A program made the translations under genes and the position numbers. Positions 1 through 55,428 of a DNA stretch of 64,000 nucleotides are shown in pieces (the stretch's first letter is position 1; every line of letters begins with the position of its first letter). The notes beneath the pieces were generated by a model. The model was not told the DNA's origin. It made no database searches and saw nothing but the letters and a program-made list of their open reading frames with translations. Source of the stretch: Podarcis cretensis (Eukaryota); assembly GCA_951804945.1 (NCBI GenBank), contig OX638156.1:10788001-10852000 (forward strand), written 5' to 3'.

Positions 1-383
1 CACTTCCTCTGATACCAACAGGAAGCTTGCACATGCCACTAAGCCTCTATATTTCCTTTGTAAATGCAAAGCCAGTTTTTGTTTACAAGCTGGTTTTATT
101 TTTTGTGTGGGGTCAGGATGGAATATGGTGCTGATTGTTACCCACAAAATCTCAGTTCTTTGTGAGATTTTACCTTCTGTCTTAAATCTTCTCTGGGAAG
201 CAAATTATCAACTGATAGTACAACACTCCCCCAGCAATGATTTTTCCAGTGGTCTCTTCCTTTGTCTGTCTGGGCCTGGTGCCTGTTTCTCTTAATATTG
301 GTTCTTTTCCAAATTGATCAAAACCCAGGGCTGTTGCACTACAAGAAACATGGAGCCCTTTTGCAACTTTTCTTTCTCAACAG

Positions 384-657
384 GAGAGGTACGTAATGTG
401 ACAATTTCCGGCCCCTCTAATGCCAAAGAAAACGATAGTGTCACTTTGAACTGCAGTGCTGCTGGCACCAATGTTTCGTATTACTGGCTGAAGGGAAGCC
501 AGCTGATTGAAGGAGGAGGTCATATCTCTTTAGACAACAACAACCAGAGGCTCATTCTCAACCCAGCCACCAGGAACGATTGAGGGCAACTACACCTGCT
601 TTGGGAACAACAGCTTCTCTGAAAGTTCCAGTGAACCACATTGGCTGCAAATCTTCT
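384..657 (+). CDS. IgC2 A-type exon, unit 1, disrupted (274 nt; 1-nt insertion gives TGA at 581-583)
   Basis: Acceptor ttctttctcaacag, donor t|gtaagt. Reads GAT-T-GAG-GGC where the other copies read GAT-GAG-GCC; sister exons are 273 nt. Confidence 0.75.
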
Positions 658-3600
658 GTAAGTCTAGACTGACTATGTGGGCAATGACAGGCAACTGGTG
701 TCCCATAGTCCAAATCCAGCCACAGTCAATCATAGGTTGCCCCATCACATTCTACTTTCTGTAGCAGACAAAAGTGGCTTTTTTAGCTCTTATCACAGCT
801 GGCTTCAGAAGGGAGTAGAAACTGCCAGAGTCTGTCCTATGCACACATTTGCTATAGCCACCCACTTTTCTGAGAGCAGTGTGGTTCTCCATTGTAGCTA
901 ATTGTGAGTATACTGGCTGCATGAAGTCAAGAAGAGTAAGAGATTTGACCCACACCTGGGACTTAAATATGAATTGGTCCACAGGTCAATCATATTGCTA
1001 ACCCCTAATCCTATTGTTACTGTTGGAGGGTTTTTTCTATTCTCCATTTCATCCAAGGAAGCCCCCCCCCCCCGACACGCTTCAAGTGCACAAATTTCAA
1101 ATACAAAATACAACTTCCTTATGGAGTTGAAAGGGTTATTTTAGGTAACCTTGTGTGTAGCATTCAGGGGAATTTGCCTGTTTGGGCTATCCCAACAAAA
1201 GACATAGAGAAAACTGAAATACTCATTGGTTTATAATACATCTGTCTTCTGATCAATAGGCTGATTGAAATATCATCTGCACCCTGATCAGGTTTCTGCT
1301 CCTTAATAGATTAATACCAAAGGAAAGCTCAAGAGCGGGTAGTGAGTGATTTACCCTGAAGTTCATACTCTTTGCATCTAAAAGAGTCATCTATTACCTA
1401 GAGCCAATTTTAATGATATACTGTATATCTTCCCAAATACCCTAGAGGTCATATATTCACTGATCATCCATTCCCAGGGTGGGGCATCCATTTTTCTCCA
1501 GGTCAGTAAGATTGCACAGGGACAGCAGGTTGCAAAAACAAAGGTTCCAAGGGCTCTGTGTTTTGGCATCAGTGTAGTGTGTAATAACATCTACACTACT
1601 TACTTACTTACACTTACTACTAGCACAGCCTGGCCCTTTCCAACATGTGGCTTTCCTATATTTGCTTCAGACGGGCCCGACAACCCTACAATCGACCCTC
1701 AGGACCCAGTTTATAGAGACCAATCCACCCTTAACCTCTCGTGTTCTGCCAAATCCAACCCACCTGCTAGTTATTCTTGGTATCATAATGAGAAACTTCT
1801 GGAAGCTCAGAATGAGTCCCAACTCCTGATCTCGCATCTTTCCCTAAATGATGCCGGCAAATATACTTGTAATGCCACCAATGATGTCACTGGCCTCTTC
1901 AGCCACACCAGCCTGGAGATCAGCGTCCTGGGTGAGTAGGTTGAATGGCCAGGCTGCATCCTAGGCAAACGTGTGCCTTCCTGTGGCTGATAAGACTGTC
2001 CTTGTAGTACCTGCTTCATCTGTACAATGGGGAATTGATTGCGCAAACTCTGTCTCGTGGCCATTTTGACTTCCAGGATGCATTCCTTGTATTCTGTCAC
2101 CTCACTGTCCCTTTGCAGTATCCATGGCAATCACTCCAGTTCAGTTCCTGAAGTACCATGAAGTTTCTCTTCTTCAGGTCAAATCCAGTTCCTGGTCTTG
2201 GAGTCTCTCTGTCTCTTACCATATTTCTGGACTCACACTACTTTTTTCCTGTCAATGAAAACTCCCAGATAACACAAAAAATGTGCCTCTCTCATCTGCC
2301 TCTATCCATTGTTGCCACATTCCTCACTTTCCTCATGGTGTGTTGCACATTCCAAGTCACAAACTCTCAGTCAATGGACCATTTCTGTTCCTTGTATACA
2401 GTCAACAATTTCAGGGTTCCAAAGTTTTGCTAGATGTCTTCCCACTTCCTCTGGTATCAACTGGAAGGTTTCACCTATCACTAAGTCTTTATATTTCCTT
2501 TATAATAACAAAGCTGATTTTCATTTCACTGTCTTTTCAAGGTGGGGTTTTTTGGGGAGGTAGAATATGGCTCTGATGTTTGGCCACAAAATCTCAGTTC
2601 TTTGTGAAGTGCTATCTTCTGTCTTAAATGTTGTCGAGGAAGCAAACCGTCAACTGGTAGTACAACACACTCCCGGCATTGATTTTTCCAATGGTCTCTT
2701 CTTTGTCTGTCTGGGCCCAGTGGCAGTTACTCTTAATACTGGTTCTTTTCCAAATTGATCAAAATCAAGGGCTATCGTGCTACAAGAAACATGGAGCCCT
2801 TTTGCAACTTTTCTTTCTCAACAGGAGAGGTACGTAATGTGACCATTTCCGGCCTCTCTAATGCCAAAGAAAACGATAGTGTCACTTTGAACTGCAATTC
2901 TGCTGGCACCAATGTTTCGTATTACTGGCTGAAGGGAAGCCAGCTGATTGAAGGAGGAGGTCATATCTCTTTAGACAACAACAACCAGAGGCTCATTCTC
3001 AACCCAGTCACCAGGAACGATGAGGCCAACTACACCTGCTTTGGGAACAACAGCTTCTCTGAAAGTTCCAGTGAGCCACATTGGCTGCAAATCTTCTGTA
3101 AGTCTAGACTGACTGTGGGCAGTGGCAGGCAGCTGGGGTCCCATAGTGCAAACCGAGCTGCAGTCAGTCTTAGTTTTCACCATCACATTCTACTTTCTGT
3201 AGCAGACAGAAGTGGCTCTTTCAGCCCTTATCACAGCTGGCTTCAGGAGGCTGGAGAAACTGCCAGAGTCTGCCCTGAGCACATGTTTGCTATAGCCTCC
3301 CTCTTTTTCTAAGAACAGTGTGGCTCTCCATTGCAACTAGCTATGAGTATACTGGCTGCATGAAGTCAAGAAGAGTAAGAGATTTGACCCACACCTGGGA
3401 CTCAACTATGAATTGGTCCGCAGGTCAATCGTATTGCTAACCCCTAATCCTGGTGTTATTATTAGACGGTTTTTTTCCTATGCTCCATTTCATCCAAGAC
3501 AGGCCCCTCCCTCACTCCCCCGGACACTCTCCAAGCACACAAATAGAAATTTCAAATAAAAAATACAACTACCTTATGGAGTTGAAAGGGTTATTTTAGG

Positions 3601-6600
3601 TAACCTTGTGTGTAGCATTCAGGGGAATTTGCTCATTTTCCAAAGGCCAGAAAGATGTAACTGAAGCTTGAAAGTCTAGTGGCCAATAGGGAGGAATACT
3701 ATAGAAGGGATCCGGTATTAGTTGCCTTGAGTCACCCAAATCTGCGAGGAACTTGGCTCACTGCCACACCCAGTTTTGACAATCCCAACAAAAGTTGTGG
3801 AGAAAACATAAAGAACTGTTTGGTTTTACTGCATCTGTCCCTTTGATCAGTGGCCTTTTGGAATATTATCTGCATCCTGATCAGCTTTCTGCTATGTGAA
3901 AGGCTAAATAATGAGGATTTAGCATTCCTACCCCCCAGCTCAAACCCTTGGGGCCTTATATTCTTCCAAACAACCCTGAGGTGATATATTCACTGAGCAT
4001 CCATTCCCAGGGATATTTCTCCAGGTTGGAATTGTTGCATGGGGACAGCAGGTTCGGGAAAAAAACGGTTCCAGTGGCTCTATATTTTGGCATCAGTGTA
4101 GTAACATCTGAGTAGCACCCTTACTACTAGCACAACCTGGCCCTTTCCAACATGTGGTTTTCCTATATTTGCTTCAGATGGGCCCGACATCCCCACAATC
4201 GACCCTCAGGACCCAGTTTATAGAGACCAATCCACCCTTAACCTCTCGTGTTCTGCCAACTCCAACCCACCTGCCAATTATTCTTGGTATCATAATGAGA
4301 AACTTCTGGAAGCTCAGAACGAGTCCCAACTCCTGATCTCGCATCTTTCTCTAAATGATGCCGGCAAATATACTTGTAATGCCACCAATGATGTCACTGG
4401 CCTTTTCAGCCAGACCAGCCTGGAGATCAGCGTCCTGGGTGAGTAGGCTGAATGGCCAGGCTGCATCCTAGGCTAACTTGCACCTTCCTGTGGCTGATAA
4501 GACTGTCCTTGCAGTCACTGCTTCATCTGTGCAACGGGGATTTGATTGCGCAAACTCTGTCTCGTGGCCATTTTGGCTTCGAGTATGCATTCCTCATATT
4601 CTGTCACCTCACTGTCCCTTTACAGTATCCATGGCAATCACTCCAGTTCAGTTCCTGAAGTACCATGAAGTTTCTCTTCTTCAGGTCAAATCCAGTTCCT
4701 GGTCTTGGAGTCTCTCTGTCTCTTACCATATTTCTGGACTCACACTACTTTTTTCCTGTCAATGAAAACTCCCAGATAACAAACAAAATTGTGCCTCTCT
4801 CATCTGCCTCTATCCATTGTTCCCTCACTCCTCACTTTTCCTCATGGTGTGTTCCACATTCCAAGTCACAAACTCTCAGTCAATGGACCATTTCTGTTCC
4901 TTGTATACAGTCAACAATTTCAGGGTTCCAATGTTTTGCTAGATGTCTTCCCACTTCCTCTGGTATCAACTGGAAGGTTTCACCTGTCACCAAGTCTTTA
5001 TATTTCCTTTATAATAACAAAGCTAATTTTCATTTCACTGTGTTTTCAAGGTGGGGTTTTTTTGGGGAGGTAGAATATGGCTCTGATGTTTGGCCACAAA
5101 ATCTCAGTTCTTTGTGAAGTGCTATCTTCTGTCTTAGATGTTGTCGAGGAACCAAACTGTCAACTAGTAGTACAACACTCTCCCGGCATTGATTTTTCCA
5201 GTGGTCTCTTCCTTTGTCTGTCTGGGCTCAGTGCCGGTTTCTCTTAATATTGGTTCCTTTCCAAATTGATCAAAATCCAGGACTCTCACACTACAAGAAA
5301 CATGGAGCCCTTTTGCAACTTTTCTTTCTCAACAGGAGAGGTACGTAATGTGACCATTTCCGGCCCCTCTAATGCCAAAGAAAATGATAGTGTCACTTTG
5401 AACTGCAGTGCTGCTGGAACCAATGTTTCGTATTACTGGCTTAAGGGAAGCCAGCTGATTGAAGGAGGAGGTCATATCTCTTTAGACAACAACAACCAGA
5501 GGCTCATTCTCAACCCAGCCACCAGGAACGATGAGGCCAACTACACCTGCTTTGGGAACAACAGCTTCTCTGAAAGTTCCAGTGAGCCACATTGGCTGCA
5601 AATCTTCTGTAAGTCTAGACTGATTATGTGGGCAATGGCAGGCAACTGGGGTCCCATAGTCCAAACCCAGCCGCAGTCAGTCATAGGGTGCCCCATCACA
5701 TTCTACTTTCTGTAGCAGACAGAAGTAGCTCTTTCAGCCCTTATCACAGCTGGCTTCAGGAGGGAGGAGAAACTGCCAGAGTCTGTCCTGGGCACACATT
5801 TCCTACAGCCTCCCCCTTTGAGAGCAGTGTGGCTCTCCATTGCAACTAGCTATGAGTATAATGGCTGCATGAAGTCAAGAAGAGTAAGAGATTTGACCCA
5901 CACCTGGGACTCAACTATGAATTGGTCCGCAGGTCAATCATATTGCTAACCCCTAATCCTATTGTTACTGTTGGAGGGTTTTTTCAGTGCTCCATTTCTA
6001 CCAAGAAAGGCCCCTCCCTCGCTCCCCCGGACACTCTCCAAGTGCACAAATAGAAATTTCAAATAAAAACCACAACTTTCTGATGGAGTTGAAAGGTTTG
6101 TTTTAGGTAACGTTGTGTGTAGCATGCAGGGGACTTTGCTCATTTTCCAAAGGCCAGAAAGATGTAACTGAAGCTTGAAAGTCTAGTGGCCAATAGGGAG
6201 GAATACTATAGAAGGGATCCGGTATTAGTTGCCTTGAGCCACCCAAATCTGCAAGCAACCTGGCTCACTGCCACACCCAGTTTTGACAATCCCAACAAAA
6301 GTTGTGTAGAAAACAGAAAGAACTGTTTGGTTTTACTGCATCTGTCCCTTTGATCAATGAACTGATTGGAATATTATCTGCATCCTGATCAGCTTTCTGC
6401 TATATGAAAGGCTAAATAATGGGGATTTAGCATTCTTACCCCCAAGCTCAAACCATTAGGGTCCTGATATTCTTTCAAACCACCCTGAGGTGATATATTC
6501 ACTGAGCATCCATTCCCAAGAATATTTCTCCAGGTTGGAATTGTTGCATGAGAACAGCAGGTTGCAAAAACAACAGTTCCAGAGACTCTATGTTTTGCCA

Positions 6601-9600
6601 TCAGTGTAGTAACAACTGAGTAGCACCTCTTCTACCAGCACAGCCTGGCCCTTTCCAACATGTGGCTTTCCTATATTTACTTCAGACGGGCCCGACATCC
6701 CCACAATCGACCCTCAGGATCCAGTTTATAGAGACCAATCCACCCTTAACCTCTCGTGTTCTGCCAACTCCAACCCACCTGCCAATTATTCTTGGTATCA
6801 TAATGAGAAACTTCTGGAAGCTCAGAACGAGTCCCAACTCCTGATCTCGCATCTTTCTCTAAATGATGCCGGCAAATATACTTGTAATGCCACCAATGAT
6901 GTCACTGGCCTTTTCAGCCACACCAGCCTGGAGATCAGCGTCCTGGGTGAGTAGCTTGAAAGGCCAGGCTGCATCCTAGGCTAACTTGCGCCTTCCTGTG
7001 GCTGATAAGACTGTCCTTGTGGTACCTGCTTCATCTGTATAATGGGGACTTGATTGCGCAAACTCTGTCTCGTGGCCATTTTGACTTCCAGGATGTTTCC
7101 TCGTATTCTGTCACCTCACTGTCCCTTTACAGTATCCATGCCGATCACTCCACTTCAGTTCCTGAAGTACCATGAAGTTTCTCTTCTTCAGGTCAAATCC
7201 AGTTCCTGGTCTTGGAGTCTCTCTGTCTCTTACCATATTTCTGGACTCACACTACTTTTTTCCTGTCAATGAAAACTCCCAGATAACAAACAAAAAATGC
7301 GCCTCTCTCATCTGCCTCTATCCATTGTTCCCTCACTCCTCAATTTTCCTCATGGTGTGTTGCACATTCCAAGTCACAAACTCTCAGTCAATGGACCATT
7401 TCTGATCCTTGTATGCAGTCAACAATTTCAGGGTTCCAAAGTTTTCCTAGATGTCTTCCCACTTCCTCTGGTATCAACTGGAAGGTTTCACCTGTCACTA
7501 AGTCTTTATATTTCCTTTATAATAACAAAGCTAATTTTCATTTCACTGTCTTTTCAAGCTGGTTTTTTTTTTTGGGGGGGGGGGTAGAATATGGCTCTGA
7601 TGTTTGGCCACAAAATCTCAGTTCTTTGTAAAGTGCTATCTTCTGTCTTAAATGTTGTCGAGGATGCAAACTGTAGACTGGTAGTACAACACTCTCCGGG
7701 CGTTGATTTTTCCAATGGTCTCCTCTTTGTCTGCCTGGGCTCAGTGCCGGTTTCTCTCAATATTGCTCCTTTTCCAAATTGATCGAAATCCAGGGCTGTT
7801 TCACTACAAGAAACATGGAGCCCTTTTGCAACTTTTCTTTCTCAACAGGAGAAGTACGTAATGTGACCATTTCCGGCCCCTCTAATGCCAAAGAAAATGA
7901 TAGTGTCACTTTGAACTGCAGTGCTGCTGGCACCAATGTTTCATATTACTGGCTGAAGGGAAGCCAGCTGATTGAAGGAGGAGGTCATATCTCTTTAGAC
8001 AACAACAACCAGAGGCTCATTCTCAACCCAGCCACCAGGAACGATGAGGCCAACTACACCTGCTTTGGGAACAACAGCTTCTCTGAAAGTTCCAGTGAGC
8101 CACATTGGCTGCAAATCTTCTGTAAGTCTAGACTGACTATGTGGGCAGTGGCAGGCAACTGGGGTCCCATAGTCCAAACCCAGCCGCAGTCAGTCATAGG
8201 TTGCCCCATCATATTCTACTTTCTGTAGCAGACAGAAGTGGCTCTTTCAGCCCTTGTCACAGCTGGCTTCAGGAGGGAGGAGAAACTGCCAGAGTCTGTC
8301 CTGGGCACACATTTGCTACAGCCTCCCCCTTTGTCTGAGATCAGTGTGGCTCTCCATTGCAACTAGCTATGAGTATAATGGCTGCATGAAGTCAAGAAGA
8401 GTAAGAGATTTGACCCACACCTGGGACTCAACTATGAATTGGTCCGCAGGTCAATCATATTGCTAACCCCTAATCCTATTGTTACTGTTGGAGGGTTTTT
8501 TCCTATGCTTCATTTCAGGCAAGACAGGCCCCTCCCTCACTCCCCCGGACACTCTCCAAGTGCACAAATAGAAATTTCATATAAAAACCACAACTTTCTG
8601 ATGGAGTTGAAAGGTTTATTTTAGGTAACGTTGTGTGTAGCATGCAGGGGGCTTTGTTCATTTTCCAGAGGCCAGAAAGCTGTAACTGAAGCTTGAAAGT
8701 CTAGTGGCCAGTAGGGAGGAATACTATAGAAGGGGTCCGGTATTAGTTGCCTTGAGTCACCCAAATCAGCAAGAAAACAGAAAGAACTGTTTGGTTTTAC
8801 TGCATCTGTCCCTTTGATCAATGGGCTGATTGGAATATTATCTGCATCCTGATCAGCTTTCTGCTACATGAAAGGCTAAATAATGGGGATTTAGCATTCC
8901 TGCCCCACCCTTAGGGTCCTGATTTTCTTCCAAACAACCCTGAGGTGATATATTCACTGAGCATCCATTCCCAAGAATATTTCTCCAGGTTGGAATTGTT
9001 GCATGAGAACAGCAGGTTGCAAAAACAACAGTTCCAGAGACTCTATGTTTTGCCATCAGTGTAGTAACAACTGAGTAGCACCTCTTCTACCAGCACAGCC
9101 TGGCCCTTTCCAACATGTGGCTTTCCTATATTTACTTCAGACGGGCCCGACATCCCCACAATCGACCCTCAGGATCCAGTTTATAGAGACCAATCCACCC
9201 TTAACCTCTCGTGTTCTGCCAACTCCAACCCACCTGCCAATTATTCTTGGTATCATAATGAGAAACTTCTGGAAGCTCAGAACGAGTCCCAACTCCTGAT
9301 CTCGCATCTTTCTCTAAATGATGCCGGCAAATATACTTGTAATGCCACCAACGATGTCACCGGCCTTTTCAGCCACACAAGCCTGGAGATCAGCGTCCTG
9401 GGTGAGTAGCTTGAATGGCCAGGCTGCATCCTAGGCAAACGTGTGCCTTCCTGTGGCTGATAAGACTGTCCTTGTAGTACCTGCTTCATCTGTACAACGG
9501 GGACCTGATTGTGCGAACTCTGTCTCGTGGCCATTTTGGCTTTCAGGATGCGTTCCTTGTATTCTGTCACCTCACTGTCCCTTTACAGTATCCATGATGA

Positions 9601-27600: not shown

Positions 27601-30163
27601 TGTGAGTCCTAATGGGGATTTCCTCTCTCCCTTGATCTCCCCACCCCTGGTCTTTCTGAAATAAGGGGTGCTGGCGCTTGAATCATACTTGGAGGCTAAG
27701 AGCCCCCTATTCCCTAACCCTGATGTGTGGAAGTAGCTTGTGGGGAGGTGGGAAAAGTACTCTGCAAATGCTAGCAGATGCTGTCTCCTTTATTAATAAA
27801 GGCCTGCCTTCTAAAGCTAAGCCATTGAAAATGCCTTCGGAGAACTGAACCCCAGTGAACACTTTCTCATATTAACCCCTAAAGCTGGTTGGCCAGCTCT
27901 CTTGCTGCGTTTTGGGGTGGTGCACACACACGGAGGCAGGTGTGTGTACGGACGTGGGTGGCACTGTGGGTTAAACCACAGAGCCTAGGACAGAAGGTCG
28001 GCAGTTCGAATCCCCGCGACGGGGTAAGCTCCTGTTGCTCGGTCCCTTCTCCTGCCAACCTAGCAGTTCGAAAGCACCTCAAAGTGCAAGTAGATAAATA
28101 GGTACCGCTCCAGCGGGAAGGTAAACGGGGTTTCTGTGCGCTGCTCTGGTTCGCCAGAAGTGGCTTAGTCATGCTGGCCACATGACCCGGAAGCTGTACG
28201 CCGGCTCCCTCGGCCAGTAAAGCAAGATGAGCTCCGCAACCCCAGAGTCGGGCGCAGCTGGACCTAATGGTCAGGGTTCCCTTTACCTTTACCTTTACCT
28301 TTACACACAGGGGGGCAGGACGACACAAACGCACCTCACCCCTGTTTCCACCCGTTGGTCCTGATTCTACTTGCTTTCCTTTCTAGATGGGCCAAATAAC
28401 GTTAAGCTGAACCAAACAGGAACCATAACTCTAAAACTAGGTTCCCGTTTGGCTCTGCTGTGTACTGCAGAGTCCCTACCCGAACCCCAGTTTCGGTGGT
28501 TTTTCAATCATACTAATATGAATGTGACGGCGAGCACCTTCAACACAGCCTTAACAGCCTGGGAAGATGGAGGCAATTACACCTGCCAGGCTTACAACAG
28601 CGTCGTTAAGAAGCTGGCCTCAGCATCTGTCAATGTGAAATTGACAACGCAGGGTGAGTCCCTTGACAAGCCCACATTTGTCTCTTGTCCCACCAGCATT
28701 TTGAATGTCCCACAGTCTCCCCCTGGACCTGATTATTTGGAAATGTGGCCAATCCGAGTGGAATTAATAGAGGAGGACGCAACTCACTGTTTTTGCGAGC
28801 AGAAAAGGGTGGTATCTAAAGTCAGCTGCACCAAGATCTCATTGAAACCAGTTGAGTGAGTTCATCCTGACAACTCCCCGTGATCTCAGTGGAACTAGGT
28901 GGAACTGGATCCAACCCAAAGGTCTTGTTTAGGCTTCCCCTTGCTCCTGCGCCTTTCATTATTTAAAAAAACATATACCCTGCCTTTCTAGGCGAGATGG
29001 CTACGCAGGACTATTAACAGTGTCACAAAATAAAACACGACAAGCAAGATAAGATATAATCAAACAATAAACTGCGTTAAAAAAATTAAACTTTAACTAC
29101 AGCCTGAAAAACGTAATAGCTTCGGTTTCCCCCACCCTGCATTGTTGCAGCTCTTTACTAGCAAAAGCTTCACCTGCTGGGTTTCTGGGTGTCCAACTGC
29201 AGTTTAAAGGCACAGATTACGCAGGCCCAGGGTTAAGAAACAGAAGAGGCAGACCTTGTTATCTATTCTTGCAGCTGAATGCTAGGAAAAAACTTTGTGG
29301 CAAATTTCTGTAGTCTTTAGAATTGAGGGTTTTATGCAGCGATATGTTTTCTTTTGGAGAAGGAATGATGATCCGGAGATGCGTGGACATTGGTTTAGAA
29401 GCTGTTCAGAAGTACAAAAATGATACAGGTTGCTTAGGCATCGTAGAAGGGGTGCAGCAAGTGCAAGCCATGGGTTTTTTTATGCTTCTCATGGGGCTGC
29501 CCATGTTGCTTTATACACCTGGTCTTCCCACATTCTAAATCCCATAGGGAGCCCACATGGGTAGAAAGGGCTGCTGCTCCAGAAGTTGTCTTTCCACACA
29601 GGAGGAGCCACAGGTCATCCGGAATGGAGCCTCCACCCTTTGTATCTGTGTTGCCCCTGTGCATGTGATGTGTGAAGAGACCTACTGGTTTGCACGGTAC
29701 AGAGCTATTCTCTGTGCTGCAGCCTGAGAACCCCATTTCTTGTGGTGGTTCTGGTTTGCTGGTTTGCTTGCTTAGGCATGGCGTGAATTTGTTAATATTG
29801 ACTCACTACCAACCCCCTGGTTACAGGAACAAATTTAGACGTTTGTTAATTTTCGTCTTGGTTCTCGGCATTCGAAAAGTCCTGCAGCTTCCTCTTACGT
29901 GCATCAGACCTAAATGCGACAAAACCTCTCAGCTTAGAGCTGCAAATTTGAAGCAAATAAGAAACGGCCTTTAAGATGCAGAAAGATTGGAAACCTAAGT
30001 GTAATATAAGCAGCTGTATATTGCTTTTTATTAGATATTGTTATTTTTATTAAATCGTTTTTTGTGATTGTGTTTTTAGCGATTGTAAGTTTTTAAACTG
30101 TATCTAATGTTGTATTTTAAATTGTTGTAACCCGCCCTGGGATTGTAGGGTGAAGGGCAGATA

Positions 30164-30206
<43 letters not shown>

Positions 30207-33200
30207 GTCATAGAATAATATGAACCAGAAACAGATTCCCGTCTTCTCCTGTGAGTGTGCATCAGAGGGCTCCAAAATCATTTGACTGTGGTGTGTTTCA
30301 CACGGAATGCTAAGCCAAAATATGACTAAGTATTAATGAGCAAGCGTGTGGGTTGCTCAACACTAGGGTTGCCATATTTCAAGAGTTGTTGAGCTTTTTT
30401 TTTGGCAATGTCCAGGAAATTCCAGACATATGGCAACCCTACTCAACACTATCTAGAGCTAAGCCTTGGTTTGTCATAGCACATGGTCCATGACTTGTCT
30501 TCCTCTAACAAACCACAAGCTGTAAGCCAAGAGCAAACCTTGGCTACAGCCCATGGTTGGTTTGGAGTGAGACAAACCATCAGCCCAGGTACACACAAAC
30601 CATGACTTAGCTCCTGGTAGGAGAGCAGCAGCGGGGCTAGGGAGGGGGTAGCCATCACCAACTTGAATAACCTCTGAGTAGATATGGTTAGGGACTGCAC
30701 TGTTAGTTTCAATTTACAAAGCCCTATAGAGCTTGGGATGAGGATATTTGCAGCACTTCCTCCTCCCGAATAGGCTGCTCATGTCACTATGGCCTAAAGA
30801 TGGGAACCCCCTAACCATATCAGACCTTTATGAAGGTTACATTCATAAGAGTCGACACGACCTTTTCTGTTGTGGCTCCTACCGTGTGGACTGCTCACTC
30901 TCCCTATTAGGCCAGCCTGGCTGCTTTTGCCAGCCGTTAAAGATCTGTCTCTTTGCCCTGGCCTTGCCTGACCTCTAGTACTTGGCTGATTATTCCGGTT
31001 TTGTTGAATCCCATAAGGTTTCTGGGTTGTGAACCATTTTGCTATTATGGCAAATGAAAAGTGCTGTAGAATTTTAAAAAAATTAATCCAAAGACCATCA
31101 CTTGTGAGGAAAGGTGATATGAAGTGAAAGCTTGAGAAGCCTCTCTGCACCCACACCACATATAAACTTGGGGTAAAGCTGCCTCCTCTTTTTTCACTCC
31201 TGCCCCTTTGCTTTGTTAACAGTAGTCAGACCATACAGAAAACAAGCTGGTGAAGTTTTCCCCACCACCACTTACCTCCATGCCATTAAAAAGTTCACTG
31301 TCTGAATTTCTGTTCGTCAGAGTGACGTTGAAGGCACAGGAGCTAGGGACGCTAAAATAAACAAACAGATGGCAACCTTGGCTAGAGGTCCCAAAAGACT
31401 GATTTAGTAAAGGGAAAGGGGCATTGCGGTCATAGTTGCTTTTCTTTGGGGGGGGAGGAAACTTCTGCATATCAACCTAAGCATGTTGTGCTTCCTTTTC
31501 CTGGTTATTTGGCTATAACTTTTGACAGAATACAGATAATTGAACAAACTTTGTTGCATTACACTCTTCATTAAATTATCTTTCCATTGTTATATAATTT
31601 TATGGTATTACTCTCCCCCCCAAAAAAAATATGGTGTTATGAGACATCTCATCTCAGAAATATACTTTTCCCAAAAGGTTTCCATAATTTTGGCCACTAG
31701 TGTATACTCTACTTTCCAAAGTTCACGATTCCTCTTGTTCCCCTCTTCCAGAATCAACTCCATCAGGTTCGGGTCTCAGTCCAGGACAAATTGTTGGAAT
31801 TGTCATAGGTTGTGTGCTTGGAGTAGCACTCATTGGAGGTCTGGGCTATTTCCTGTTCACCAAGACTGCCTTGGGGTAAGTTTGCCATCTCGTTCATCTT
31901 GGATTGGGGTTCCCCATTTGCCATCTGAATTTGCCATCTCCCAGCTTCTCCAGGACCTTCCTGCTCTATTTACCTGGTTTGATTGGTCTCTCTGCTCACG
32001 CTCGGGGTTTGAGGCTGTCTCAGGGGTGCGGGTTTCTTTCCTGTCTCTCCAGCCTGGGTCGGGGCCCTGTCTTACACATCCCTTGGAAGAACCAAGTGTG
32101 CCCTGCTGTTCATGCCTCCCAGCCAAAGCACTGACACTAACCTGGGTTGCCAGAATCAAGATAGGGCAGGGGAAGAAACTTCTGCTTTTCTGCAAAGAAC
32201 TTGAATAAGTTGCAGCTGCTGAAATTCCCCGCTTCTTTATAGCCTGTCAAAAGACACAGAAGGCCTGCCCTCTGTTGAATCTGGTGACTCCAAAAGCACA
32301 CACATTTCATTTATTGATTTATAAAGCAATTTATTTATTATAACAAATATGTGTATACTGCTGCAATATAACAAATATATCAAAGCGGTGTACAGCAATA
32401 AAAGCATAAAATCATACAGTGAAACCACTAAAAGCGTTTAAAAAGTTTAAAACACACATATGGAGCGAATGGATAATTATGATTGGATGAACCCTTTTTA
32501 AAAAAGTGTTAAGTCTTACGCATTGTTTATGACATGTTTAGGCAACAATATTAAGTATGGACCTGCCAAACTTTCAGCTATCAGGGACCCTGAAAAGTCA
32601 AATGCATATATAAGTGGGGAGATTGTAAGGGGTGGGGTAGGATGATGATAGTGCCAAAATTTCAAAGATTGACAGTGTTCACGGGAGGAGAAAATTCGTC
32701 TCCTGAACTCAGAACAGACGTATAAAGGTCGGGGTGTGTGTCTGAAAGACAGAGAGACTGGGTGGGGGGGTGGTCTTCAGATCATCTCCAATACTTGCCA
32801 ATGAAGCCATAAGCAATGGAAGACAAAACAAGGCTAGCCCATGGCTACTGGTTTTTGCTCATAACCACATAGGGGTGTGCCCTAGGCCTATTCTCAGTTC
32901 ACACAGGGAAACAGCGAGGCCCCCCAAGGCCTTGCCAGTGCCCTTTTATTACCAGTTGAGGACCCTTCAACTCTGTAGATGTTGATGGACTACAACTTGC
33001 ATCATCCCTGACTAGTGGCCCTGTTAGCTGGGAATCATGGGAGATGTAGTCCAGCAGCATCTGAAGGGCCGGAGGTTGCCCATGAACTGAGTGCGCTCTT
33101 TAGAACGTGTCCCAGAATTCCCTGCAATTTACTGGGGTTTCCTTTGCTGGCACACGAGGGTTCCCTTTGCAAACAGGTCAATACGGGGAAGGTTCCGTCA

Positions 33201-36200
33201 GTGTAGAAAGTTTGGAAACCACCACTGGTGTGGCCAAGGGCAAGATAAAAATTGGATGGATGACAATGTGGCACAAAGAAAGCGAATGAGATTTATTATT
33301 TCACGTGACTGATCACTAGTATAGGACGAGGGGTAATGTGCTGGTTCTGTTGTTGGGGGAGAGACCCCCTGCTTGCTATAGGATCAAACAGTGTCTGCTG
33401 TTTACCTAGGAGGACGGAACAACACTCATCTAATGGAAACATACCCTCAGCTCCCGGCCGCAGTAAGTATCAGCCCAACGGGCTGGGCCGGGGTCTGTGT
33501 GACGCATGTTGTGTGCTCTATGTTACTCTCCCCGGCCACCATCACCCCATTTAGGCTGAGCCTTTATAGTTCACGAAGAAGGTAGATGGCCTTCCCGTAC
33601 ACTTCTGTGCCAAAGCATGGGCAAGTAGGACCACTCCATCCCCAACCCAGATGCATCATGGGAAACTCCTGCTTAATCCGTTTCATGGGAGCAGGGAGAA
33701 AGGACTTCACAGCTGCTCCAGCTCCCATTTCCAAGAGACTGGCTGGGGGAATCTCTTCCCTGACCCCTCCTGGGGAGGGGAAAGGAAGCTGCTGTTTTCT
33801 GTGGAGTGTGGGTATCTTCCTGTCTGCTGTCGCCCTCTCCGCCCACCCCACAAAAACCCTCCATCGTCTTTTTGGGATTCCTGCTGTGGCTCTGTAGCCA
33901 GCCTGGTGGTGGAATAGCTCACGAGAGGGGACTTGCAGGAGGTGATGGGGCTCGCCAGACTGGTCTCTCCAGAGAACGGCTATCTCTGCCCTCTGCACCG
34001 CCTCCGTAATTTTCCTGGAATCAAGTCTATCCAAGACCGTTCTTTGCCTGCCTCTTTAATCATGCTTGGGCTTCGGTGCGAAGCAAGGAACGGAAGTGAA
34101 GAATTGAGGGGTGAGGGTGGAAGCAGGTGGCTCCCTTCCTCTACTCCCTACATTGGCCTTGGAGTGCTCAGGTGGACTCAGCACAGGTAGGAAGATGCAG
34201 CAGGTGGGGCTGGAGCAAGGGGGAAGGGTGTGAGGTGGGGGAAAGACTGGAGTGAGGAGGGGACGGTCTACATGCACACACACATCCCCTCTCCTGTCCC
34301 ACCTGTCCAGCTGATGGACCATTACCTTGCTCACCTTTGGTCCCCACCCTGCATTCAGCTCTCACCTGGGGCTCCTAGAAGCTGTCAGCAGGCGACAGCA
34401 ACCACACCCTGGAAACGGCTTCAACTGGCCGGCTAAACCAGGTGAGGATAGCCAATGGGTCTCACACCCTCAGTGAGCTAGGGACTTTCCCCTGCATGCG
34501 AAGACAGACTCTGGCAGATGGAGCAGACGAGATCAAAAGCAGGTCCAACAGTGAAGAAGGCAGATGGGGCCCATCCATCTGGGATGGGAGACCATCTAGG
34601 AGAAGGAAAACTCTGATCCTAAACCTCTGCTGCCTTGTGGGATATCTTCAGGAGAAGAACAGACTCAGGAATAAACCCTACACAAATTCGGAGTGGAGTC
34701 CCTAAAACGGTTGGCGTTGTATGCCTCCTTCTGGCAACTCCTGCAGCCCAGGCACCTTCATTGCTTACCACATTACTAATCCAGCTCACGCCATTTGTCC
34801 TGTCTGCTTCCGCTAATCCAGTGGGAGTCCCCGCCCCACTGTGGTCCAAGGGCAGAGGGTTGTGGGTTTTCAGTGTCTCCTGCTTGGCTCCCGTGGGCTT
34901 GTGTTCAGGCTCTGTCTGTTGTACCTGCCAGTTCCCTGATACTCTCTCTCTGTCCTGTCTCTGTCATTTCAGACCAGGGCGTCACTGACACCAAACCCAC
35001 ACCGGTAAGGACGGAATCATGATATTGAAGTCCGTATCATGATAATTGGTTTCATAATTTTTGACCTGGCAATATCTTGCAAATCATGATGTGTGTGTGT
35101 GTGTGTGTGCGTGCTATCCAAAAATCACAATGTGGGGGAAACCGTGAAGCCAGCCAATGCCTCAACATAGCTCCACCCTTATTTCAGACATTGTGATATA
35201 TCGGTACATTGCGATGTTTAGCTGGTGATATATCACAGTGCTGAAAACCAGATATCGCCCAGTCCTAGAGGGGTCTGGGGGCTTCCTGAGCCCATTCCCA
35301 ATCCTGGAACAAGGAAGCAGCCCCAACTCTTTGACCTGCTAACAGCAGCTTCATCTGCAGAACGTAGCAATGTGACAATGACTCAAGTTCTTGATGGGGA
35401 CAAGATGTTTGGATTGCCTTGATGGTGGCAAACTGCCCTTCATTAGAGATGTCCAGGCAGAATCTGTACGGGTCCGCGTAGCATAGATGCTGTAGTAGTG
35501 GATTTCTTGCATCAGCAGGTCGTGTGATGGACGACCCCCGAGGCCCCTTCCAAATTTTCAGAAGCATTATCATGCTTAACAAACAATCTGCCTCTCCCCA
35601 TCCTTGTGATCTGGTCACTTGGTATCCTAGCCCTAATGTTCCAGGATTCTGGCCTGAGAGGTGAGTGGACTTTGGTGCCCAAACAGCCAAACTACCCTGG
35701 GGATGTCTTGCTTGCTCCAGGGTAAGTGAGGTAAGTCTGTACAATCTGCTGGTCAACGTAGAGTTTAATTTTACCACGCTTCTAGCACCTCCGAGGGAAT
35801 TAGATGTATCTCTCTCAGAGCAGGAGGAGAGGGCTCCCTAAAGGGGAACTAGGAGCTTGTTGCTAGGAGATTCATAAGCTTCTCTTTGGCCTCCACCTCA
35901 CCTGTTTGGAACGGCCTCCCCCAGGAGGTGGTGGACTCTCCTTCCTTGGAGGTTGGGTGGTCATCTGTCAAGGATGGTTTAGCTGACATTCCTGCATTAC
36001 AGGACCCTTGAGGTCCCTTCCGATTCTACAATTCTGAGATTCCCTCATCACATGCAAGGAGAATCGCCACCTTTTAAAATGGACCTGCTCATGTGCAGTG
36101 GGTAAGGGGCTTGGGGCTCAGGTGGTGCTGGCTAAAGGCTTAGCCACACTTACCTTTTGCCGTTCTCTTTCCAGGCGCAGGTCCACACTTTAAAATTCCG

Positions 36201-37029
36201 AGTCTGAGAGCTCCTCTTTCTTTTGCCCTGGAGCTTTCCCAGCAAAATCTAACTATTTGAAGCTGAAGCGCAACGAATGGCCATTCAAGTTTTCTGTAGG
36301 TTGCCATTTGCTCCAATTCAGCTTTAAAGAGCAGGTTCTTGTGCAGAAAGCTATGGATTAAAAAAAAAATAAAAGGATGCTTGGACAGAGAGCTTTAGAG
36401 TGTGGACCGTTCCTGGAAAGCATGGAGGAAAAGTTAAGTGTGGATAAGCTGTAAGTGTTGGCCAACAGAGGAGGAAGACCAGAGCAAAACAGCCAGAAGC
36501 AAAATACAGAGAACCTAGTAAGCTTAAAAGTAATCTTAATTGCGCAGATTGTTGAATTCCAAAGAAATGAAATGTGTTTCAAAATTTCAAAATAAGAATT
36601 TAATTCTTGGCTGTTACCCTGGTACTTTTGCACTCGCTGGCTGGATCACTGGAAGTTTGATGTTTCCTGAGTAACAGATTGATTATCGATTGCATGCTTT
36701 TCCTTATAACCTTGCAAGTGAAAAGGCCTGCGCCTCATTGTGTGTTGCTGTTTGCTTTTCTTAATTCCAATGAAAGCTGGAGATTCAGGGAAGGGCCTTT
36801 CAAGATCCCAGGAGGGGCTGCTCCCCCCACAGGCCCACCTGTGGCAAGGGCCCTGCCTTCAAACCTTCCTTTGCTCCCTCTGACTCCTTCTGATGGTCTC
36901 TTGCAGGGTGAAGAGGACATACAATATTCAACACTAGCCTTCAAGGCCAACCACCCTCCTCAGCCACAGCCAGCGGCCGCCCGGCCTTTGGAAAGCAACA
37001 TAATATACTCAGAAATCAAGAAGAAATGA
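384..37029 (+). CDS. CEACAM1-like: CEACAM1-like inhibitory Ig-superfamily receptor, 5'-incomplete, 22 exons in window (18 IgC2 + TM + 3 cytoplasmic)
   Basis: Spliced by hand. All junctions are GT-AG and phase compatible. A/B junctions give the CEACAM-typical F/L-Y-GP(D) motif. TM reads GLSPGQIVGIVIGCVLGVALIGGLGYFLF; tail ends IQYSTL...IIYSEIKKK*. Strict orthology to CEACAM1 is not established. Confidence 0.9.
1671..1931 (+). CDS. IgC2 B-type exon, unit 1 (261 nt)
   Basis: tttgcttcag|ac...ctgg|gtgagt; GPDNPTIDPQ...LSCSAKSNPPASYSW...DAGKYTCNA. Confidence 0.92.
2825..3097 (+). CDS. IgC2 A-type exon, unit 2 (273 nt)
   Basis: cag|ga...ttct|gtaagt; VTLNC...YYWLK...DEANYTC. Confidence 0.92.
4178..4438 (+). 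CDS. IgC2 B-type exon, unit 2 (261 nt)
   Basis: gcttcag|at...ctgg|gtgagt; open frame with both Ig cysteines. Confidence 0.92.
5336..5608 (+). CDS. IgC2 A-type exon, unit 3 (273 nt)
   Basis: Same splice sites and open frame as unit 2. Confidence 0.92.
6686..6946 (+). CDS. IgC2 B-type exon, unit 3 (261 nt)
   Basis: tacttcag|ac...g|gtgagt; open frame. Confidence 0.92.
7849..8121 (+). CDS. IgC2 A-type exon, unit 4 (273 nt)
   Basis: cag|ga...t|gtaagt; open frame. Confidence 0.92.
9141..9401 (+). CDS. IgC2 B-type exon, unit 4 (261 nt)
   Basis: tacttcag|ac...g|gtgagt; open frame. Confidence 0.92.
10301..10573 (+). CDS. IgC2 A-type exon, unit 5 (273 nt; VTWNC variant)
   Basis: cag|ga...t|gtaagt; open frame. 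Confidence 0.92.
11655..11915 (+). CDS. IgC2 B-type exon, unit 5 (261 nt)
   Basis: tacttcag|ac...g|gtgagt; open frame. Confidence 0.92.
12816..13088 (+). CDS. IgC2 A-type exon, unit 6 (273 nt)
   Basis: cag|ga...t|gtaagt; open frame. Confidence 0.92.
14169..14429 (+). CDS. IgC2 B-type exon, unit 6 (261 nt)
   Basis: tgcttcag|ac...g|gtgagt; open frame. Confidence 0.92.
15595..15864 (+). CDS. IgC2 A-type exon 7 (270 nt, diverged)
   Basis: Long pyrimidine tract then tacag|ga; YVTNITISDSGKAIENSITVLNCTSAGTNVSYSW...DSDSYSC...LLNVL; t|gtaagt. Confidence 0.92.
16170..16545 (-). mobile_element. L2-clade LINE 3' fragment
   Basis: (TAA)n tail then ttatttataccccacc...gggtttccccagccactc; same family as 62686-63048. 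Confidence 0.65.
16734..16978 (+). mobile_element. Old tRNA-derived SINE (Squam3/Ther1-like)
   Basis: tRNA-like head with ggttcaaattc B box, ctgggtgacttt core, AAAT-rich tail. Confidence 0.65.
18125..18385 (+). CDS. IgC2 B-type exon 7 (261 nt, diverged)
   Basis: actccag|at; GPGVPEI...LSCTADSNPAAQYTW...SGNYTCKAFN; g|gtaagt. Confidence 0.92.
19245..19517 (+). CDS. IgC2 A-type exon 8 (273 nt)
   Basis: ttccttacag|tg; EVSDVTI...LTCTS...YYWFR...DAGSYTC...ELTVF; t|gtaagt. Confidence 0.92.
19695..19949 (+). CDS. IgC2 B-type exon 8 (255 nt)
   Basis: gctccag|at; GPDDPVISP...LSCSADSHPPPQYTW...DTGDYTCSAFN...VEVY; g|gtaagt. Confidence 0.92.
20553..20949 (+). mobile_element. Sauria SINE with an internal CR1-type 3' fragment at 20689-20759
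   Basis: gggttaaaccac...agcagttcgaaagcac...(acctt t)n tail. Confidence 0.85.
21530..23838 (-). mobile_element. 5'-truncated L2-clade LINE with frameshifted reverse transcriptase
   Basis: Three overlapping minus ORFs: NYRPVSNLPFLGKVIE, FQSGFR, LLDLSAAFD, GVPQGAILSP, YANDTQL, SRLDYCN, LHWLPV. (TAA)n tail; candidate 8-bp TSD tcagctta at 21522-21529 and 23839-23846. Confidence 0.9.
24645..24693. repeat. (TTTG)n microsatellite
   Basis: Read directly. Confidence 0.95.
27249..27521 (+). CDS. IgC2 A-type exon 9 (273 nt, most divergent)
   Basis: gtgtgcag|aa; TLSSPVL...VSLQC...ITWFKD...DEEGMYTCKATNPAS; t|gtaagt. Confidence 0.92.
27950..28302 (+). mobile_element. Sauria SINE
   Basis: Near full length, (accttt)n tail. 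Confidence 0.88.
28387..28653 (+). CDS. IgC2 B-type exon 9, membrane proximal (267 nt)
   Basis: ctttctag|at; GPNNVKL...LLCTAESLPEPQFRW...DGGNYTCQAYN; g|gtgagt. Confidence 0.9.
30162..30206. repeat. (ATT)n microsatellite, tail of a degraded L2-type fragment
   Basis: Read directly. Confidence 0.85.
30364..30441. mobile_element. 78-bp hAT-type MITE
   Basis: TIR tagggttgccata/tatggcaacccta; perfect 8-bp TSD ctcaacac. Confidence 0.8.
31752..31875 (+). CDS. Transmembrane exon (124 nt, phase 1/2)
   Basis: ctcttccag|aa; ESTPSGSGLSPGQIVGIVIGCVLGVALIGGLGYFLFTKTALG; gg|gtaagt. Resembles human CEACAM1 GLSPGAIAGIVIGV. Missed by the ORF track. Confidence 0.92.
33410..33462 (+). CDS. Cytoplasmic exon 1 (53 nt, phase 2/1)
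   Basis: tttacctag|g ... a|gtaagt; RTEQHSSNGNIPSAPGR; same length as CEACAM1 exon 7. Confidence 0.85.
34973..35004 (+). CDS. Cytoplasmic exon 2 (32 nt, phase 1/0)
   Basis: tgtcatttcag|ac ... ccg|gtaagg; NQGVTDTKPTP; same length as CEACAM1 exon 8. Confidence 0.85.
36907..37029 (+). CDS. Terminal cytoplasmic exon with two ITIM-type motifs and stop
   Basis: tcttgcag|ggt; GEEDIQYSTLAFKANHPPQPQPAAARPLESNIIYSEIKKK*. Confidence 0.93.
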   Translation, partial: GEEDIQYSTLAFKANHPPQPQPAAARPLESNIIYSEIKKK

Positions 37030-41751: not shown

Positions 41752-42153
41752 GTTGTTGTTGTTGTTTAGTCGTTTAGTCGTGTCCGACTCTTCGTGACCC
41801 CATGGACCAGAGTACGCCAGGCACTCCTGTCTTCCACTGCCTCCCGCAGTTTGGTCAAACTTATGCTGGTAGCTTCAAGAACACTATCCAACCATCTCAT
41901 TCTCTGTTGTCCCCTTCTCCTTGTGCCCTCAATCTTTCCCAGCATCAGGGTCTTTTCCAGGGTGTCTTCTCTTCTCATGAGGTGGCCAAAGTATTGGAGT
42001 CTCAGCTTCAGGATCTATCCTTCCAGTGAGCGCTCACGGCTGATTTCCTTAAGAATGGAGAGGTTTGATCTTCTTGCAGTCCATGGGACTCTCAAGAGTC
42101 TCCTCCAGCACCACAATTCAAAAGCATTAATTCTTCAGCGATCAGCCTTCTTT
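41752..42153 (-). mobile_element. Bov-B (RTE) LINE, 5'-truncated
   Basis: Minus ORF LEKTLMLGKIEGTRRRG...HGVTKSRTRLND; (CAA)n tail; 11-bp TSD atgctggctat. Confidence 0.92.
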
Positions 42154-55078: not shown

Positions 55079-55428
55079 AAGGTAAAGCGACCCCTGACTA
55101 TTAGGTCCAGTTGTGACCGACTCTGGGGTTGCGGCACTCATCTTGCTTTATTGGCCGAGGGAGCCTGCGTACAGCTTCCACGTCAAGTGGCCAGCATGAG
55201 TAACCCGCTTCTGGCGAACCAGAGCAGCCCACGGAAATGATGTTTACCTTCCCACTGGAGCAGTACCTATTTATCTACTTGCACTTTGACGTGCTTTCGA
55301 ACTGCTAGGTTGGCAGGAGCAGGGACTGAGCAACAGGAGCTCACCCTGTCACGGGGATTCGAACCACTGACCTTCTGACTGGCAAGCCCTAGGCTCTGTG
55401 GTTTAACACACAGCGCCACCCGCGTCCC
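55079..55428 (-). mobile_element. Sauria SINE
   Basis: Reverse complement of the consensus; 13-bp TSD tgagtgttgttag. Confidence 0.88.

What the first reader, a model, noticed from the sequence alone, without database searches (positions are those of the whole stretch)
384..37029. Giant CEACAM1-like inhibitory receptor with at least 18 IgC2 domains in a lizard
Seen: nine A-B exon pairs (about 1,600 codons of Ig domains) splice in frame to a CEACAM1-type TM exon and ITIM tail. Bases 1-383 are another copy of the B-to-A intron, so further domains and the IgV N-domain should lie upstream. Known: human CEACAM1 has 3 IgC2 domains and CEACAM5 has 6; sialoadhesin has 17 Ig domains but no ITIM. Inference: this is a rod many tens of nm long that lifts the ligand- or pathogen-binding N-domain above the glycocalyx while still signalling through SHP-1/2. 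That is unusual because inhibitory receptors are normally size-matched to close cell contacts. I know of no description of such a CEACAM, but cannot exclude one.
Basis: partly seen in the sequence, partly recalled or inferred. Interest (0 to 1): 0.85.

Follow-up and report, generated by a model that had tools for sequence, protein, structure and literature searches.

The report
Long lizard CEACAM1 gene, already described
This is the CEACAM1 inhibitory-receptor gene of a lacertid lizard, lengthened to 17-18 immunoglobulin-domain exons by recent tandem duplication; the structure is real, but a 2026 preprint already describes such genes in lizards.

Summary
The observation largely holds. Bases 1-14,780 are a tandem array with a period of about 2.5 kb and about 6 copies. 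The array carries alternating CEACAM A-type and B-type IgC2 exons. It is followed by three diverged A-B pairs, a transmembrane exon, cytoplasmic exons of 53, 32 and 123 nt, and a tail with two ITIMs.

All 22 exons have AG/GT splice sites, and all Ig exons are phase 1-1. One correction is needed: the first A exon (384-657) has an extra T at 580/581 that creates an in-frame TGA. Only B1 to the stop codon reads as one open frame (1,619 codons, 17 Ig exons).

Bases 1-383 match only the "pre-A" part of the repeat unit. They do not prove that more Ig exons lie upstream.

The closest proteins are Podarcis muralis and Lacerta agilis CEACAM1 models, which NCBI names "hemicentin-1-like". They reach 1,857 aa and 18 IgC domains.

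Zimmermann & Kammerer (preprint, June 2026, PMC13278318) already report lizard CEACAM1 with up to 16 IgC domains, recent A/B pair amplification and the long-stalk anti-pathogen idea.

What is new here is modest. This is another lacertid with a slightly higher exon count. Its array is an independent expansion of a different ("alpha") unit than in P. muralis.

The scan had already noted this same stretch twice.

The parts
1..14780 (+). Tandem array of A-B exon-pair units. The period is about 2,510 bp, with about 5.9 copies in the window. Each unit is about 550 nt of pre-A sequence, the A exon, a roughly 1,050-nt intron, the B exon, and about 350 nt of post-B sequence.
   Evidence: Self-BLAST gives 93-96% identity over 2.5-5.9 kb. 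Per-part identity matrices show exons at 95-100% and introns at 82-99%. The 3' boundary of the array lies at about 14776-14784.
384..657 (+). A1 is an A-type IgC2 exon of 274 nt. An extra T at 580/581 shifts the frame and gives TGA at 581-583. The rest of the exon is intact in the shifted frame.
   Evidence: A1 is 97.4-97.8% identical to A2-A6, although its flanking introns are only 82-84% identical to theirs.
1671..1931 (+). B1 is a B-type IgC2 exon of 261 nt, phase 1-1.
2825..3097 (+). A2 is an A-type IgC2 exon of 273 nt.
   Evidence: Pfam Ig_3/ig/I-set hits. Best PDB match is the A domains of CEA, E = 1.5e-27.
4178..4438 (+). B2 is a B-type IgC2 exon of 261 nt.
   Evidence: Pfam Ig_2 at 1.1e-18. 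Best PDB match is the B domains of CEA, E = 5e-46.
5336..5608 (+). A3 exon, 273 nt.
6686..6946 (+). B3 exon, 261 nt. It is identical to B5 at the nucleotide level.
7849..8121 (+). A4 exon, 273 nt.
9141..9401 (+). B4 exon, 261 nt.
10301..10573 (+). A5 exon, 273 nt.
11655..11915 (+). B5 exon, 261 nt.
12816..13088 (+). A6 exon, 273 nt.
14169..14429 (+). B6 exon, 261 nt. It is the last exon of the array.
15595..15864 (+). A7 is a diverged A-type exon of 270 nt.
   Evidence: It is 97.8% aa identical to the matching P. muralis domain.
18125..18385 (+). B7 is a diverged B-type exon of 261 nt.
19245..19517 (+). A8 exon, 273 nt.
19695..19949 (+). B8 exon, 255 nt.
27249..27521 (+). A9 is a membrane-proximal A-type exon of 273 nt.
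28387..28653 (+). B9 is the membrane-proximal B-type exon, 267 nt.
31752..31875 (+). Transmembrane exon of 124 nt, ending in phase 2. It encodes ...GLSPGQIVGIVIGCVLGVALIGGLGYFLFTKTALG.
   Evidence: It is 95-97.5% identical to the Podarcis CEACAM1 transmembrane segment.
33410..33462 (+). Cyt1 is the 53-nt cytoplasmic exon (RTEQHSSNGNIPSAPGR). Skipping it shifts the frame and gives the short tail ...GPGRH*.
   Evidence: Podarcis, Lacerta and Pogona orthologues have an identical or near-identical peptide. PMC13278318 describes a 53-bp Cyt exon in reptile CEACAM1.
34973..35004 (+). Cyt2 is a 32-nt cytoplasmic exon (QGVTDTKPTP).
   Evidence: It matches the orthologue tails.
36907..37029 (+). Cyt3 is the last coding exon. 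It carries two ITIM-consensus motifs, IQYSTL and IIYSEI, and the stop codon at 37027-37029.

Best explanation
The window holds all of the CEACAM1 orthologue of a lacertid lizard except its 5' end. The species is close to Podarcis muralis and to a second annotated Podarcis species, and more distant from Lacerta agilis, but it is not any of the three.

The extracellular stalk has been lengthened by unequal crossing-over between introns. This repeatedly duplicated a 2.5-kb unit that carries one A-type and one B-type IgC2 exon. Every Ig exon is phase 1-1, so any number of units can be added, lost or skipped in splicing without breaking the frame.

The predicted protein is a type I membrane receptor. 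It has an N domain (encoded upstream, outside the window), then up to 17-18 heavily N-glycosylated IgC2 domains, then a transmembrane helix.

The cytoplasmic tail has two forms. The long form has two ITIMs and would recruit SHP-1/SHP-2 after tyrosine phosphorylation. The short form, ...GPGRH, is made when the 53-nt Cyt1 exon is skipped.

Shown here: the exon structure, the domain types, the open frame from B1 to the stop, orthology, purifying constraint on the array exons, and a lineage-specific make-up of the array.

Inferred, not shown: that all array exons are in one mRNA, that the stalk is an extended rod of roughly 70 nm, that the tail signals through SHP-1/2, and that stalk length is selected by pathogens.
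For: - Array and exon structure.
- Open frame: 1,619 codons across 21 exons from B1 to the stop.
- Domain types: A and B exons match the A and B domains of CEA respectively, and Pfam finds Ig domains in all exons tested.
- Tail: the transmembrane and cytoplasmic exons reproduce the tails of annotated squamate CEACAM1 proteins almost residue for residue.
- P. muralis models: they join the array B exons to the A7 orthologue and run on to the ITIM tail. XP_028598084.1 has 14 IgC domains and XP_077788339.1 has 18.
- Constraint: array exons are 95-100% identical while their introns are 82-99% identical. pN/pS is mostly about 0.1-0.3 where differences are enough to judge (range 0-0.7), including pair 1.
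- Short tail: skipping Cyt1 gives GPGRH*, the same short tail as in annotated Anolis and Podarcis isoforms.
- Literature: PMC13278318 reports the same architecture in lizards.
Against: - No transcript evidence exists for this species.
- A1 is frameshifted in this assembly.
- One annotated model from another Podarcis species (CAI5780991.1, 789 aa) joins the N domain directly to A7 and skips the whole array.
- The preprint shows extensive IgC exon skipping in a snake CEACAM1. The full-length form may therefore be a minor isoform.
- The N exon is outside the window, so the 5' end of the gene was not seen.
Confidence: 0.78

Rival explanations
1. The array exons are cassette exons that are mostly skipped. 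The main protein would then be a short CEACAM1 (N domain plus about 6 IgC domains), and the giant form would be rare or absent.
For: The Podarcis model CAI5780991.1 (P0184) joins the N domain directly to A7. The P. muralis model X4 skips A8/B8. The preprint finds twelve snake CEACAM1 splice variants with 0-6 IgC domains. A1 is frameshifted, so at least that exon must be skipped to give a full protein.
Against: Array exons keep perfect splice sites and open frames. They are much more conserved than their introns, with pN/pS mostly about 0.1-0.3 where differences are enough to judge. That is not expected for exons that are never translated. P. muralis models from two annotation releases include all five array pairs.
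Confidence: 0.25
2. The array is an assembly artefact, a false expansion of one or two units.
For: Units 3 and 5 are very similar. Their introns are 98.4-99.2% identical and B3 equals B5. Long tandem repeats are prone to mis-assembly. This could not be checked against reads.
Against: Units differ by 1-17% in their introns, and intron lengths are unit-specific, from 1,013 to 1,081 nt. Related species also carry arrays of 3-5 pairs in independent assemblies. The preprint reports a quintuplication in P. muralis.
Confidence: 0.05
3. The array belongs to a different gene or pseudogene from the exons that carry the transmembrane segment and ITIM tail.
For: The first array exon seen is broken. The N exon was not seen.
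Against: The array and the later exons are on the same strand with the same exon phases. Only a 1,165-nt intron separates B6 from A7. No other Ig, leader or terminal exon was found in the window. Orthologous models in P. muralis and L. agilis run from array B exons into the A7 orthologue.
Confidence: 0.03

Closest known systems
Lizard CEACAM1 with amplified A/B exon pairs (Podarcis muralis, 16 IgC-like domains; Zimmermann & Kammerer, preprint PMC13278318, 2026). The NCBI models are XP_028598084.1 and XP_077788339.1, named 'hemicentin-1-like'.
   Same: Same gene and same architecture: an array of A-B pairs, then three older pairs, then TM, Cyt1 (53 nt), Cyt2 and an ITIM tail. Unique exons are 90-98% aa identical. 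The published functional idea is also the same: a long stalk keeps the N domain away from the membrane.
   Different: The window has six array pairs rather than five, so 18 Ig exons, of which 17 are intact. All six B exons carry the 'VYRDQSTLNL' (alpha) signature. In P. muralis four of the five, and in L. agilis two of the three, carry 'VYIEHFPLNL' (beta). The expansion here is therefore of a different unit and is lineage-specific.
Human CEACAM1 (CD66a, 4L/4S isoforms)
   Same: Same A- and B-type IgC2 domains, each from one phase-1 exon. Same order of TM exon followed by cytoplasmic exons. Same ...YSE[VI]KK C-terminus with two tyrosine motifs. The human exon sizes and tail are from my own knowledge. 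The A/B domain match was tested.
   Different: Human CEACAM1 has 3 IgC2 domains (A1, B, A2). The second human motif is ITSM-like, whereas here both motifs fit the ITIM consensus.
Human CEACAM5 (CEA)
   Same: It has repeated A-B pairs (three) that arose by exon-pair duplication. It is the best solved-structure match for both exon types.
   Different: CEA is GPI-anchored and has no ITIM tail. It has only 6 IgC2 domains.
Sialoadhesin (Siglec-1) and CD22
   Same: These are long Ig-rod receptors. Sialoadhesin has 17 Ig domains (own knowledge). CD22 has ITIMs.
   Different: The window exons match CEACAM far better than CD22 (5e-46 against 6.6e-11). The tail and transmembrane segment are of CEACAM1 type.

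Membership tests
CEACAM family, CEACAM1 orthologue | Alternating A-type and B-type IgC2 domains, each encoded by one phase 1-1 exon | tested here: met
   There are 18 exons of 255-274 nt with AG/GT sites and phase 1-1. A exons match the A domains of CEA and B exons match its B domains.
CEACAM family, CEACAM1 orthologue | N-terminal IgV-like N domain encoded together with part of the leader | not testable with these tools
CEACAM family, CEACAM1 orthologue | Transmembrane exon followed by three cytoplasmic exons, the first of 53 nt, whose skipping shifts the frame and gives long and short tails | tested here: met
   TM is 124 nt, Cyt1 53 nt, Cyt2 32 nt, followed by Cyt3. Skipping Cyt1 gives GPGRH*. 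The peptides equal the orthologue tails. The preprint mentions the 53-bp exon.
CEACAM family, CEACAM1 orthologue | ITIM plus ITIM or ITSM in the last exon | tested here: met
   IQYSTL and IIYSEI both fit [SIVL]xYxx[IVL], and the positions are conserved in 14 reptile orthologues.
CEACAM family, CEACAM1 orthologue | Closest relatives are annotated CEACAM1 genes of related species | tested here: met
   Identity is 90-98% aa to P. muralis and 80-97% to L. agilis in the unique exons. Other squamate hits are named CEACAM1/5-like.
CEACAM family, CEACAM1 orthologue | Synteny with the CEACAM locus (flanking LIPE, TOMM40, BCL3) | not tested
   No recognisable gene was found in 37-64 kb. Pfam found nothing in ten open frames, eight of them in 37-64 kb and two in the B8-A9 intron.
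Hemicentin (the name given by NCBI to the orthologues) | Secreted matrix protein with a VWA domain, more than 40 Ig modules, EGF repeats and a fibulin-type C-terminus | tested here: not met
   The gene ends in a transmembrane helix and an ITIM tail. The Ig exons are of CEACAM A/B type. The name is an automatic mislabel.
Siglec / CD22 | Ig domains and tail closest to Siglecs | tested here: not met
   CD22 d6-d7 scores E = 6.6e-11 against 5e-46 for CEA. The tail matches CEACAM1 orthologues.

The most novel reading that the evidence does not exclude
In this species the CEACAM1 stalk array is a young coding macrosatellite that is still unstable. It would be an independent expansion of the 'alpha' A-B unit, different from the unit expanded in P. 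muralis. Together with any exons upstream, it could give the longest CEACAM known (18-20 or more IgC domains). It may also vary in copy number between individuals, so that receptor length itself would be a polymorphic trait under pathogen-driven selection.
Probability: 0.3. Interest if true: 0.5.

Novelty: new member of a known kind. Interest (0 to 1): 0.3.

Why it matters
Very long inhibitory receptors raise a real question: how can an ITIM receptor work when its ligand-binding domain sits roughly 70 nm from the membrane? That question is no longer new. Specialists described lizard CEACAM1 with up to 16 IgC domains in 2026 and offered the same explanation.

This window adds three smaller things:
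- An exon-level map for another lacertid, with 17-18 Ig exons.
- Evidence that the array exons are under purifying constraint.
- Evidence that different repeat units were expanded in different lacertid lineages. This suggests repeated lengthening rather than a single event.

It also shows that NCBI's name "hemicentin-1-like" for these genes is a mislabel.

Tried and rejected
- **Reads.** There is no read-level evidence on expression, array copy number or the extra T in A1.
- **Related loci.** The P. muralis and other Podarcis loci, and the region upstream of the array, could not be fetched.
- **Joined model.** Exons were searched one by one by reference. Frame continuity was checked only inside a script, which printed split codons and stop counts.
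- **Tandem Repeats Finder.** It found nothing because the period exceeds its limit. Self-BLAST was used instead.
- **Earlier scan notes.** Word searches for CEACAM gave nothing useful on the upstream window.
- **Supplements.** The preprint's supplementary files are not held. The species list and the per-species exon counts could not be checked.
- **Other open frames.** Pfam found nothing in ten long open frames, eight in 37-64 kb and two in the GC-rich part of the B8-A9 intron. Rfam found no RNA family in the window.
- **Species.** The species was not pinned down. No database protein is identical to the window exons. The nearest are P. muralis and a second Podarcis species, at 90-98%.
- **B-domain tree.** The tree gave weak support for the alpha/beta split (83/39). 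The claim therefore rests on the discrete five-residue signature, not on the tree.
- **Structure prediction.** It was not run. It would need a joined sequence and would not change the verdict.
Full report
**1. What is in the sequence**

A self-comparison shows that bases 1 to about 14,780 form a tandem array with a period of about 2,510 bp and just under six copies. Long alignments between copies are 93-96% identical. The first copy is more diverged, at 87-88%. Tandem Repeats Finder missed the array because the period exceeds its limit.

Each unit carries two open exons. Alignment of all copies and a splice-site scan give these array exons:
- A-type exons: 384-657, 2825-3097, 5336-5608, 7849-8121, 10301-10573 and 12816-13088.
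- B-type exons: 1671-1931, 4178-4438, 6686-6946, 9141-9401, 11655-11915 and 14169-14429.

Three diverged pairs follow:
- A7 15595-15864 and B7 18125-18385.
- A8 19245-19517 and B8 19695-19949.
- A9 27249-27521 and B9 28387-28653.

All of these exons have AG acceptors with pyrimidine tracts, GT donors and phase 1-1. The split codons read Tyr at A->B junctions and Gly, Val or Glu at B->A junctions.

Pfam finds Ig domains in every exon tested. Against solved structures, the A exon matches the three A domains of human CEA best (E = 1.5e-27). The B exon matches the three B domains best (E = 5e-46), with about 55-60% identity in the GPDxPTI...LNLSC...SNPPAxYSW block.

**2. The 3' end of the gene**

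The transmembrane exon is 31752-31875. I located a 53-nt exon at 33410-33462 with a GTAAGT donor, a 32-nt exon at 34973-35004 and the last exon at 36907-37029.

Their translations reproduce the tails of annotated squamate CEACAM1 proteins almost exactly: LGRTEQHSSNGNIPSAPGRNQGVTDTKPTPGEEDIQYSTLAFKANHPPQPQPAAARPLESNIIYSEIKKK.

The tail carries IQYSTL and IIYSEI. Both fit the ITIM consensus, at positions conserved in 14 reptile orthologues. Geckos, snakes and turtles have an ITSM at the second site.

Skipping the 53-nt exon shifts the frame to ...TALGPGRH*. The same short tail is annotated in Anolis and Podarcis isoforms.

**3. The correction to the observation**

A1 is 274 nt long, not 273. An extra T at 580/581 shifts the frame and creates TGA at 581-583. 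Started from A1, every later exon is out of frame. Started from B1, the 21 remaining exons form one open frame of 1,619 codons ending at the stop.

Apart from that one base and a neighbouring substitution, A1 is intact in the shifted frame. It is 97.4-97.8% identical to A2-A6, while its flanking introns are only 82-84% identical to theirs. The lesion is therefore either very recent or an assembly error.

**4. Are there more domains upstream?**

The intron after B6 shares only its first 342-355 nt with the array's B->A introns. The repeat unit therefore consists of about 550 nt of "pre-A" sequence, the A exon, an intron, the B exon, and about 350 nt of "post-B" sequence.

Bases 1-383 align to positions 514-900 of the B->A intron, which lies wholly inside the pre-A part. 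That part is expected upstream of the first A exon of the array as well. So bases 1-383 do not show that another B exon lies upstream.

No N-domain exon and no further Ig exon exist anywhere in the window.

**5. Is the array functional?**

Within the array, exons are 95-100% identical while introns are 82-99% identical. Between copies pN/pS is mostly about 0.1-0.3 where differences are enough to judge (range 0-0.7), including comparisons with the old pair 1. The counts are small, but the direction is consistent in most comparisons. This argues that the array exons are, or very recently were, translated.

The Ig exons carry 85 N-glycosylation sequons and each has the two canonical cysteines.

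Units 3 and 5 are nearly identical. Their introns are 98.4-99.2% identical and B3 equals B5. A 5-kb two-unit duplication is also visible in the self-comparison.

**6. Relatives and species**

An exhaustive profile search with one B exon puts squamate CEACAM proteins among the top hits, alongside very long multi-Ig proteins that were not named. The named hits are Sphaerodactylus 1,457 aa, Pogona 1,450 aa and Eublepharis 1,233 aa.

Tail-directed searches found two lacertid proteins that NCBI names "hemicentin-1-like". One is Lacerta agilis XP_033014657.1 (1,501 aa). The other is a set of Podarcis muralis isoforms of 1,501-1,857 aa.

Mapping the window exons onto these proteins gives the following:
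- XP_028598084.1 is N + five array pairs + A7B7 + A9B9 + TM + long tail.
- XP_077788339.1 is N + two diverged IgC domains + five array pairs + A7B7 + A8B8 + A9B9 + TM + long tail, which makes 18 IgC domains.
- A model from another Podarcis species (CAI5780991.1, 789 aa) joins N directly to A7 and skips any array.

The unique exons are 90-98% identical to P. muralis and 80-97% identical to L. agilis. No database protein is identical to the window. It therefore comes from a lacertid close to Podarcis but is not P. muralis, L. agilis or the second annotated Podarcis species.

**7. A lineage-specific array**

All six window B exons carry the block VYRDQSTLNL, as do the first array B domains of P. 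muralis and L. agilis. P. muralis B2-B5 and L. agilis B2-B3 carry VYIEHFPLNL instead.

The second type is shared by two genera, so it is old, yet it is absent from the window's array. The window's array is therefore an expansion or homogenisation of a different unit from the one multiplied in P. muralis. Tree support is weak, so this claim rests on the discrete signature.

**8. What is already known**

Zimmermann & Kammerer (Research Square preprint, June 2026, PMC13278318) surveyed more than 100 reptile species. They report the following:
- Lizard CEACAM1 has from 4 (Komodo dragon) to 16 (common wall lizard) IgC-like exons.
- Closely related A/B exon pairs indicate recent amplification, a "quintuplication" in the wall lizard.
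- A rattlesnake shows alternative splicing of IgC exons and of the 53-bp cytoplasmic exon.
- The extended stalk may keep the adhesin-binding N domain away from co-receptors on the membrane.

**9. Mechanism**

The mechanism is inferred from homology. The product would be a type I receptor whose N domain sits on a stalk of up to 17-18 IgC2 domains.

At roughly 4 nm per Ig domain (general knowledge), the stalk would be about 70 nm if extended. The long tail would recruit SHP-1/2 through its two ITIMs. The short tail would not.

Because all Ig exons are symmetric in phase, both genomic copy-number change and exon skipping alter stalk length without breaking the frame. None of this was tested at the RNA or protein level here.

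**10. Limits**

- The preprint's supplements are not held.

**Verdict**

It is a new member of a kind that has already been described.

Noticed in passing
window 575-588: A1 carries an extra T (580/581) next to a C->G change at 586. Two changes within 7 nt of an otherwise well-conserved exon could be a local assembly error or a very recent lesion.
   Followed up: partly
window B exons, e.g. 4178-4438, compared with P0178 and P0164: Lacertid array B domains come in two types. 'VYRDQSTLNL' is found in all six window copies and in the first array copy in P. muralis and L. agilis. 'VYIEHFPLNL' is found in the later copies in those two species. The window lacks the second type.
   Followed up: yes
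P0164, P0168, P0169, P0171, P0173-P0183 (NCBI XP_033014657.1, XP_028598084.1, XP_0777883xx): NCBI names the lacertid CEACAM1 orthologues 'hemicentin-1-like', an automatic mislabel caused by the many Ig domains. The newer P. muralis isoforms use two different N-terminal leader/N sequences and carry an extra diverged IgC pair before the array. These may be alternative first exons or chimeras with a neighbouring CEACAM1-like gene.
   Followed up: partly
window 20556-20951, 27946-28297, 48227-48593, 55079-55431, 56805-57091, 58322-58672: An interspersed repeat of about 350 bp occurs in six copies in both orientations at 78-90% identity. Two copies lie inside CEACAM1 introns. It has no Rfam match.
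   Followed up: no
window 41756-42156, 53659-54059, 53777-54058, 55791-56072: A second interspersed repeat of about 280-400 bp shows 91-92% identity between copies. It has a long open frame on one strand but no Pfam hit.
   Followed up: partly
window 22000-24000: There is a GC-rich block (GC 0.54) inside the 7.3-kb B8-A9 intron. It has several overlapping open frames of 90-160 codons; Pfam found nothing in the two longest.
   Followed up: partly
window 37030-64000: No recognisable gene lies downstream of the CEACAM1 stop codon. The first AATAAA is at 39340, which would give a 3' UTR of about 2.3 kb if it is used.
   Followed up: partly
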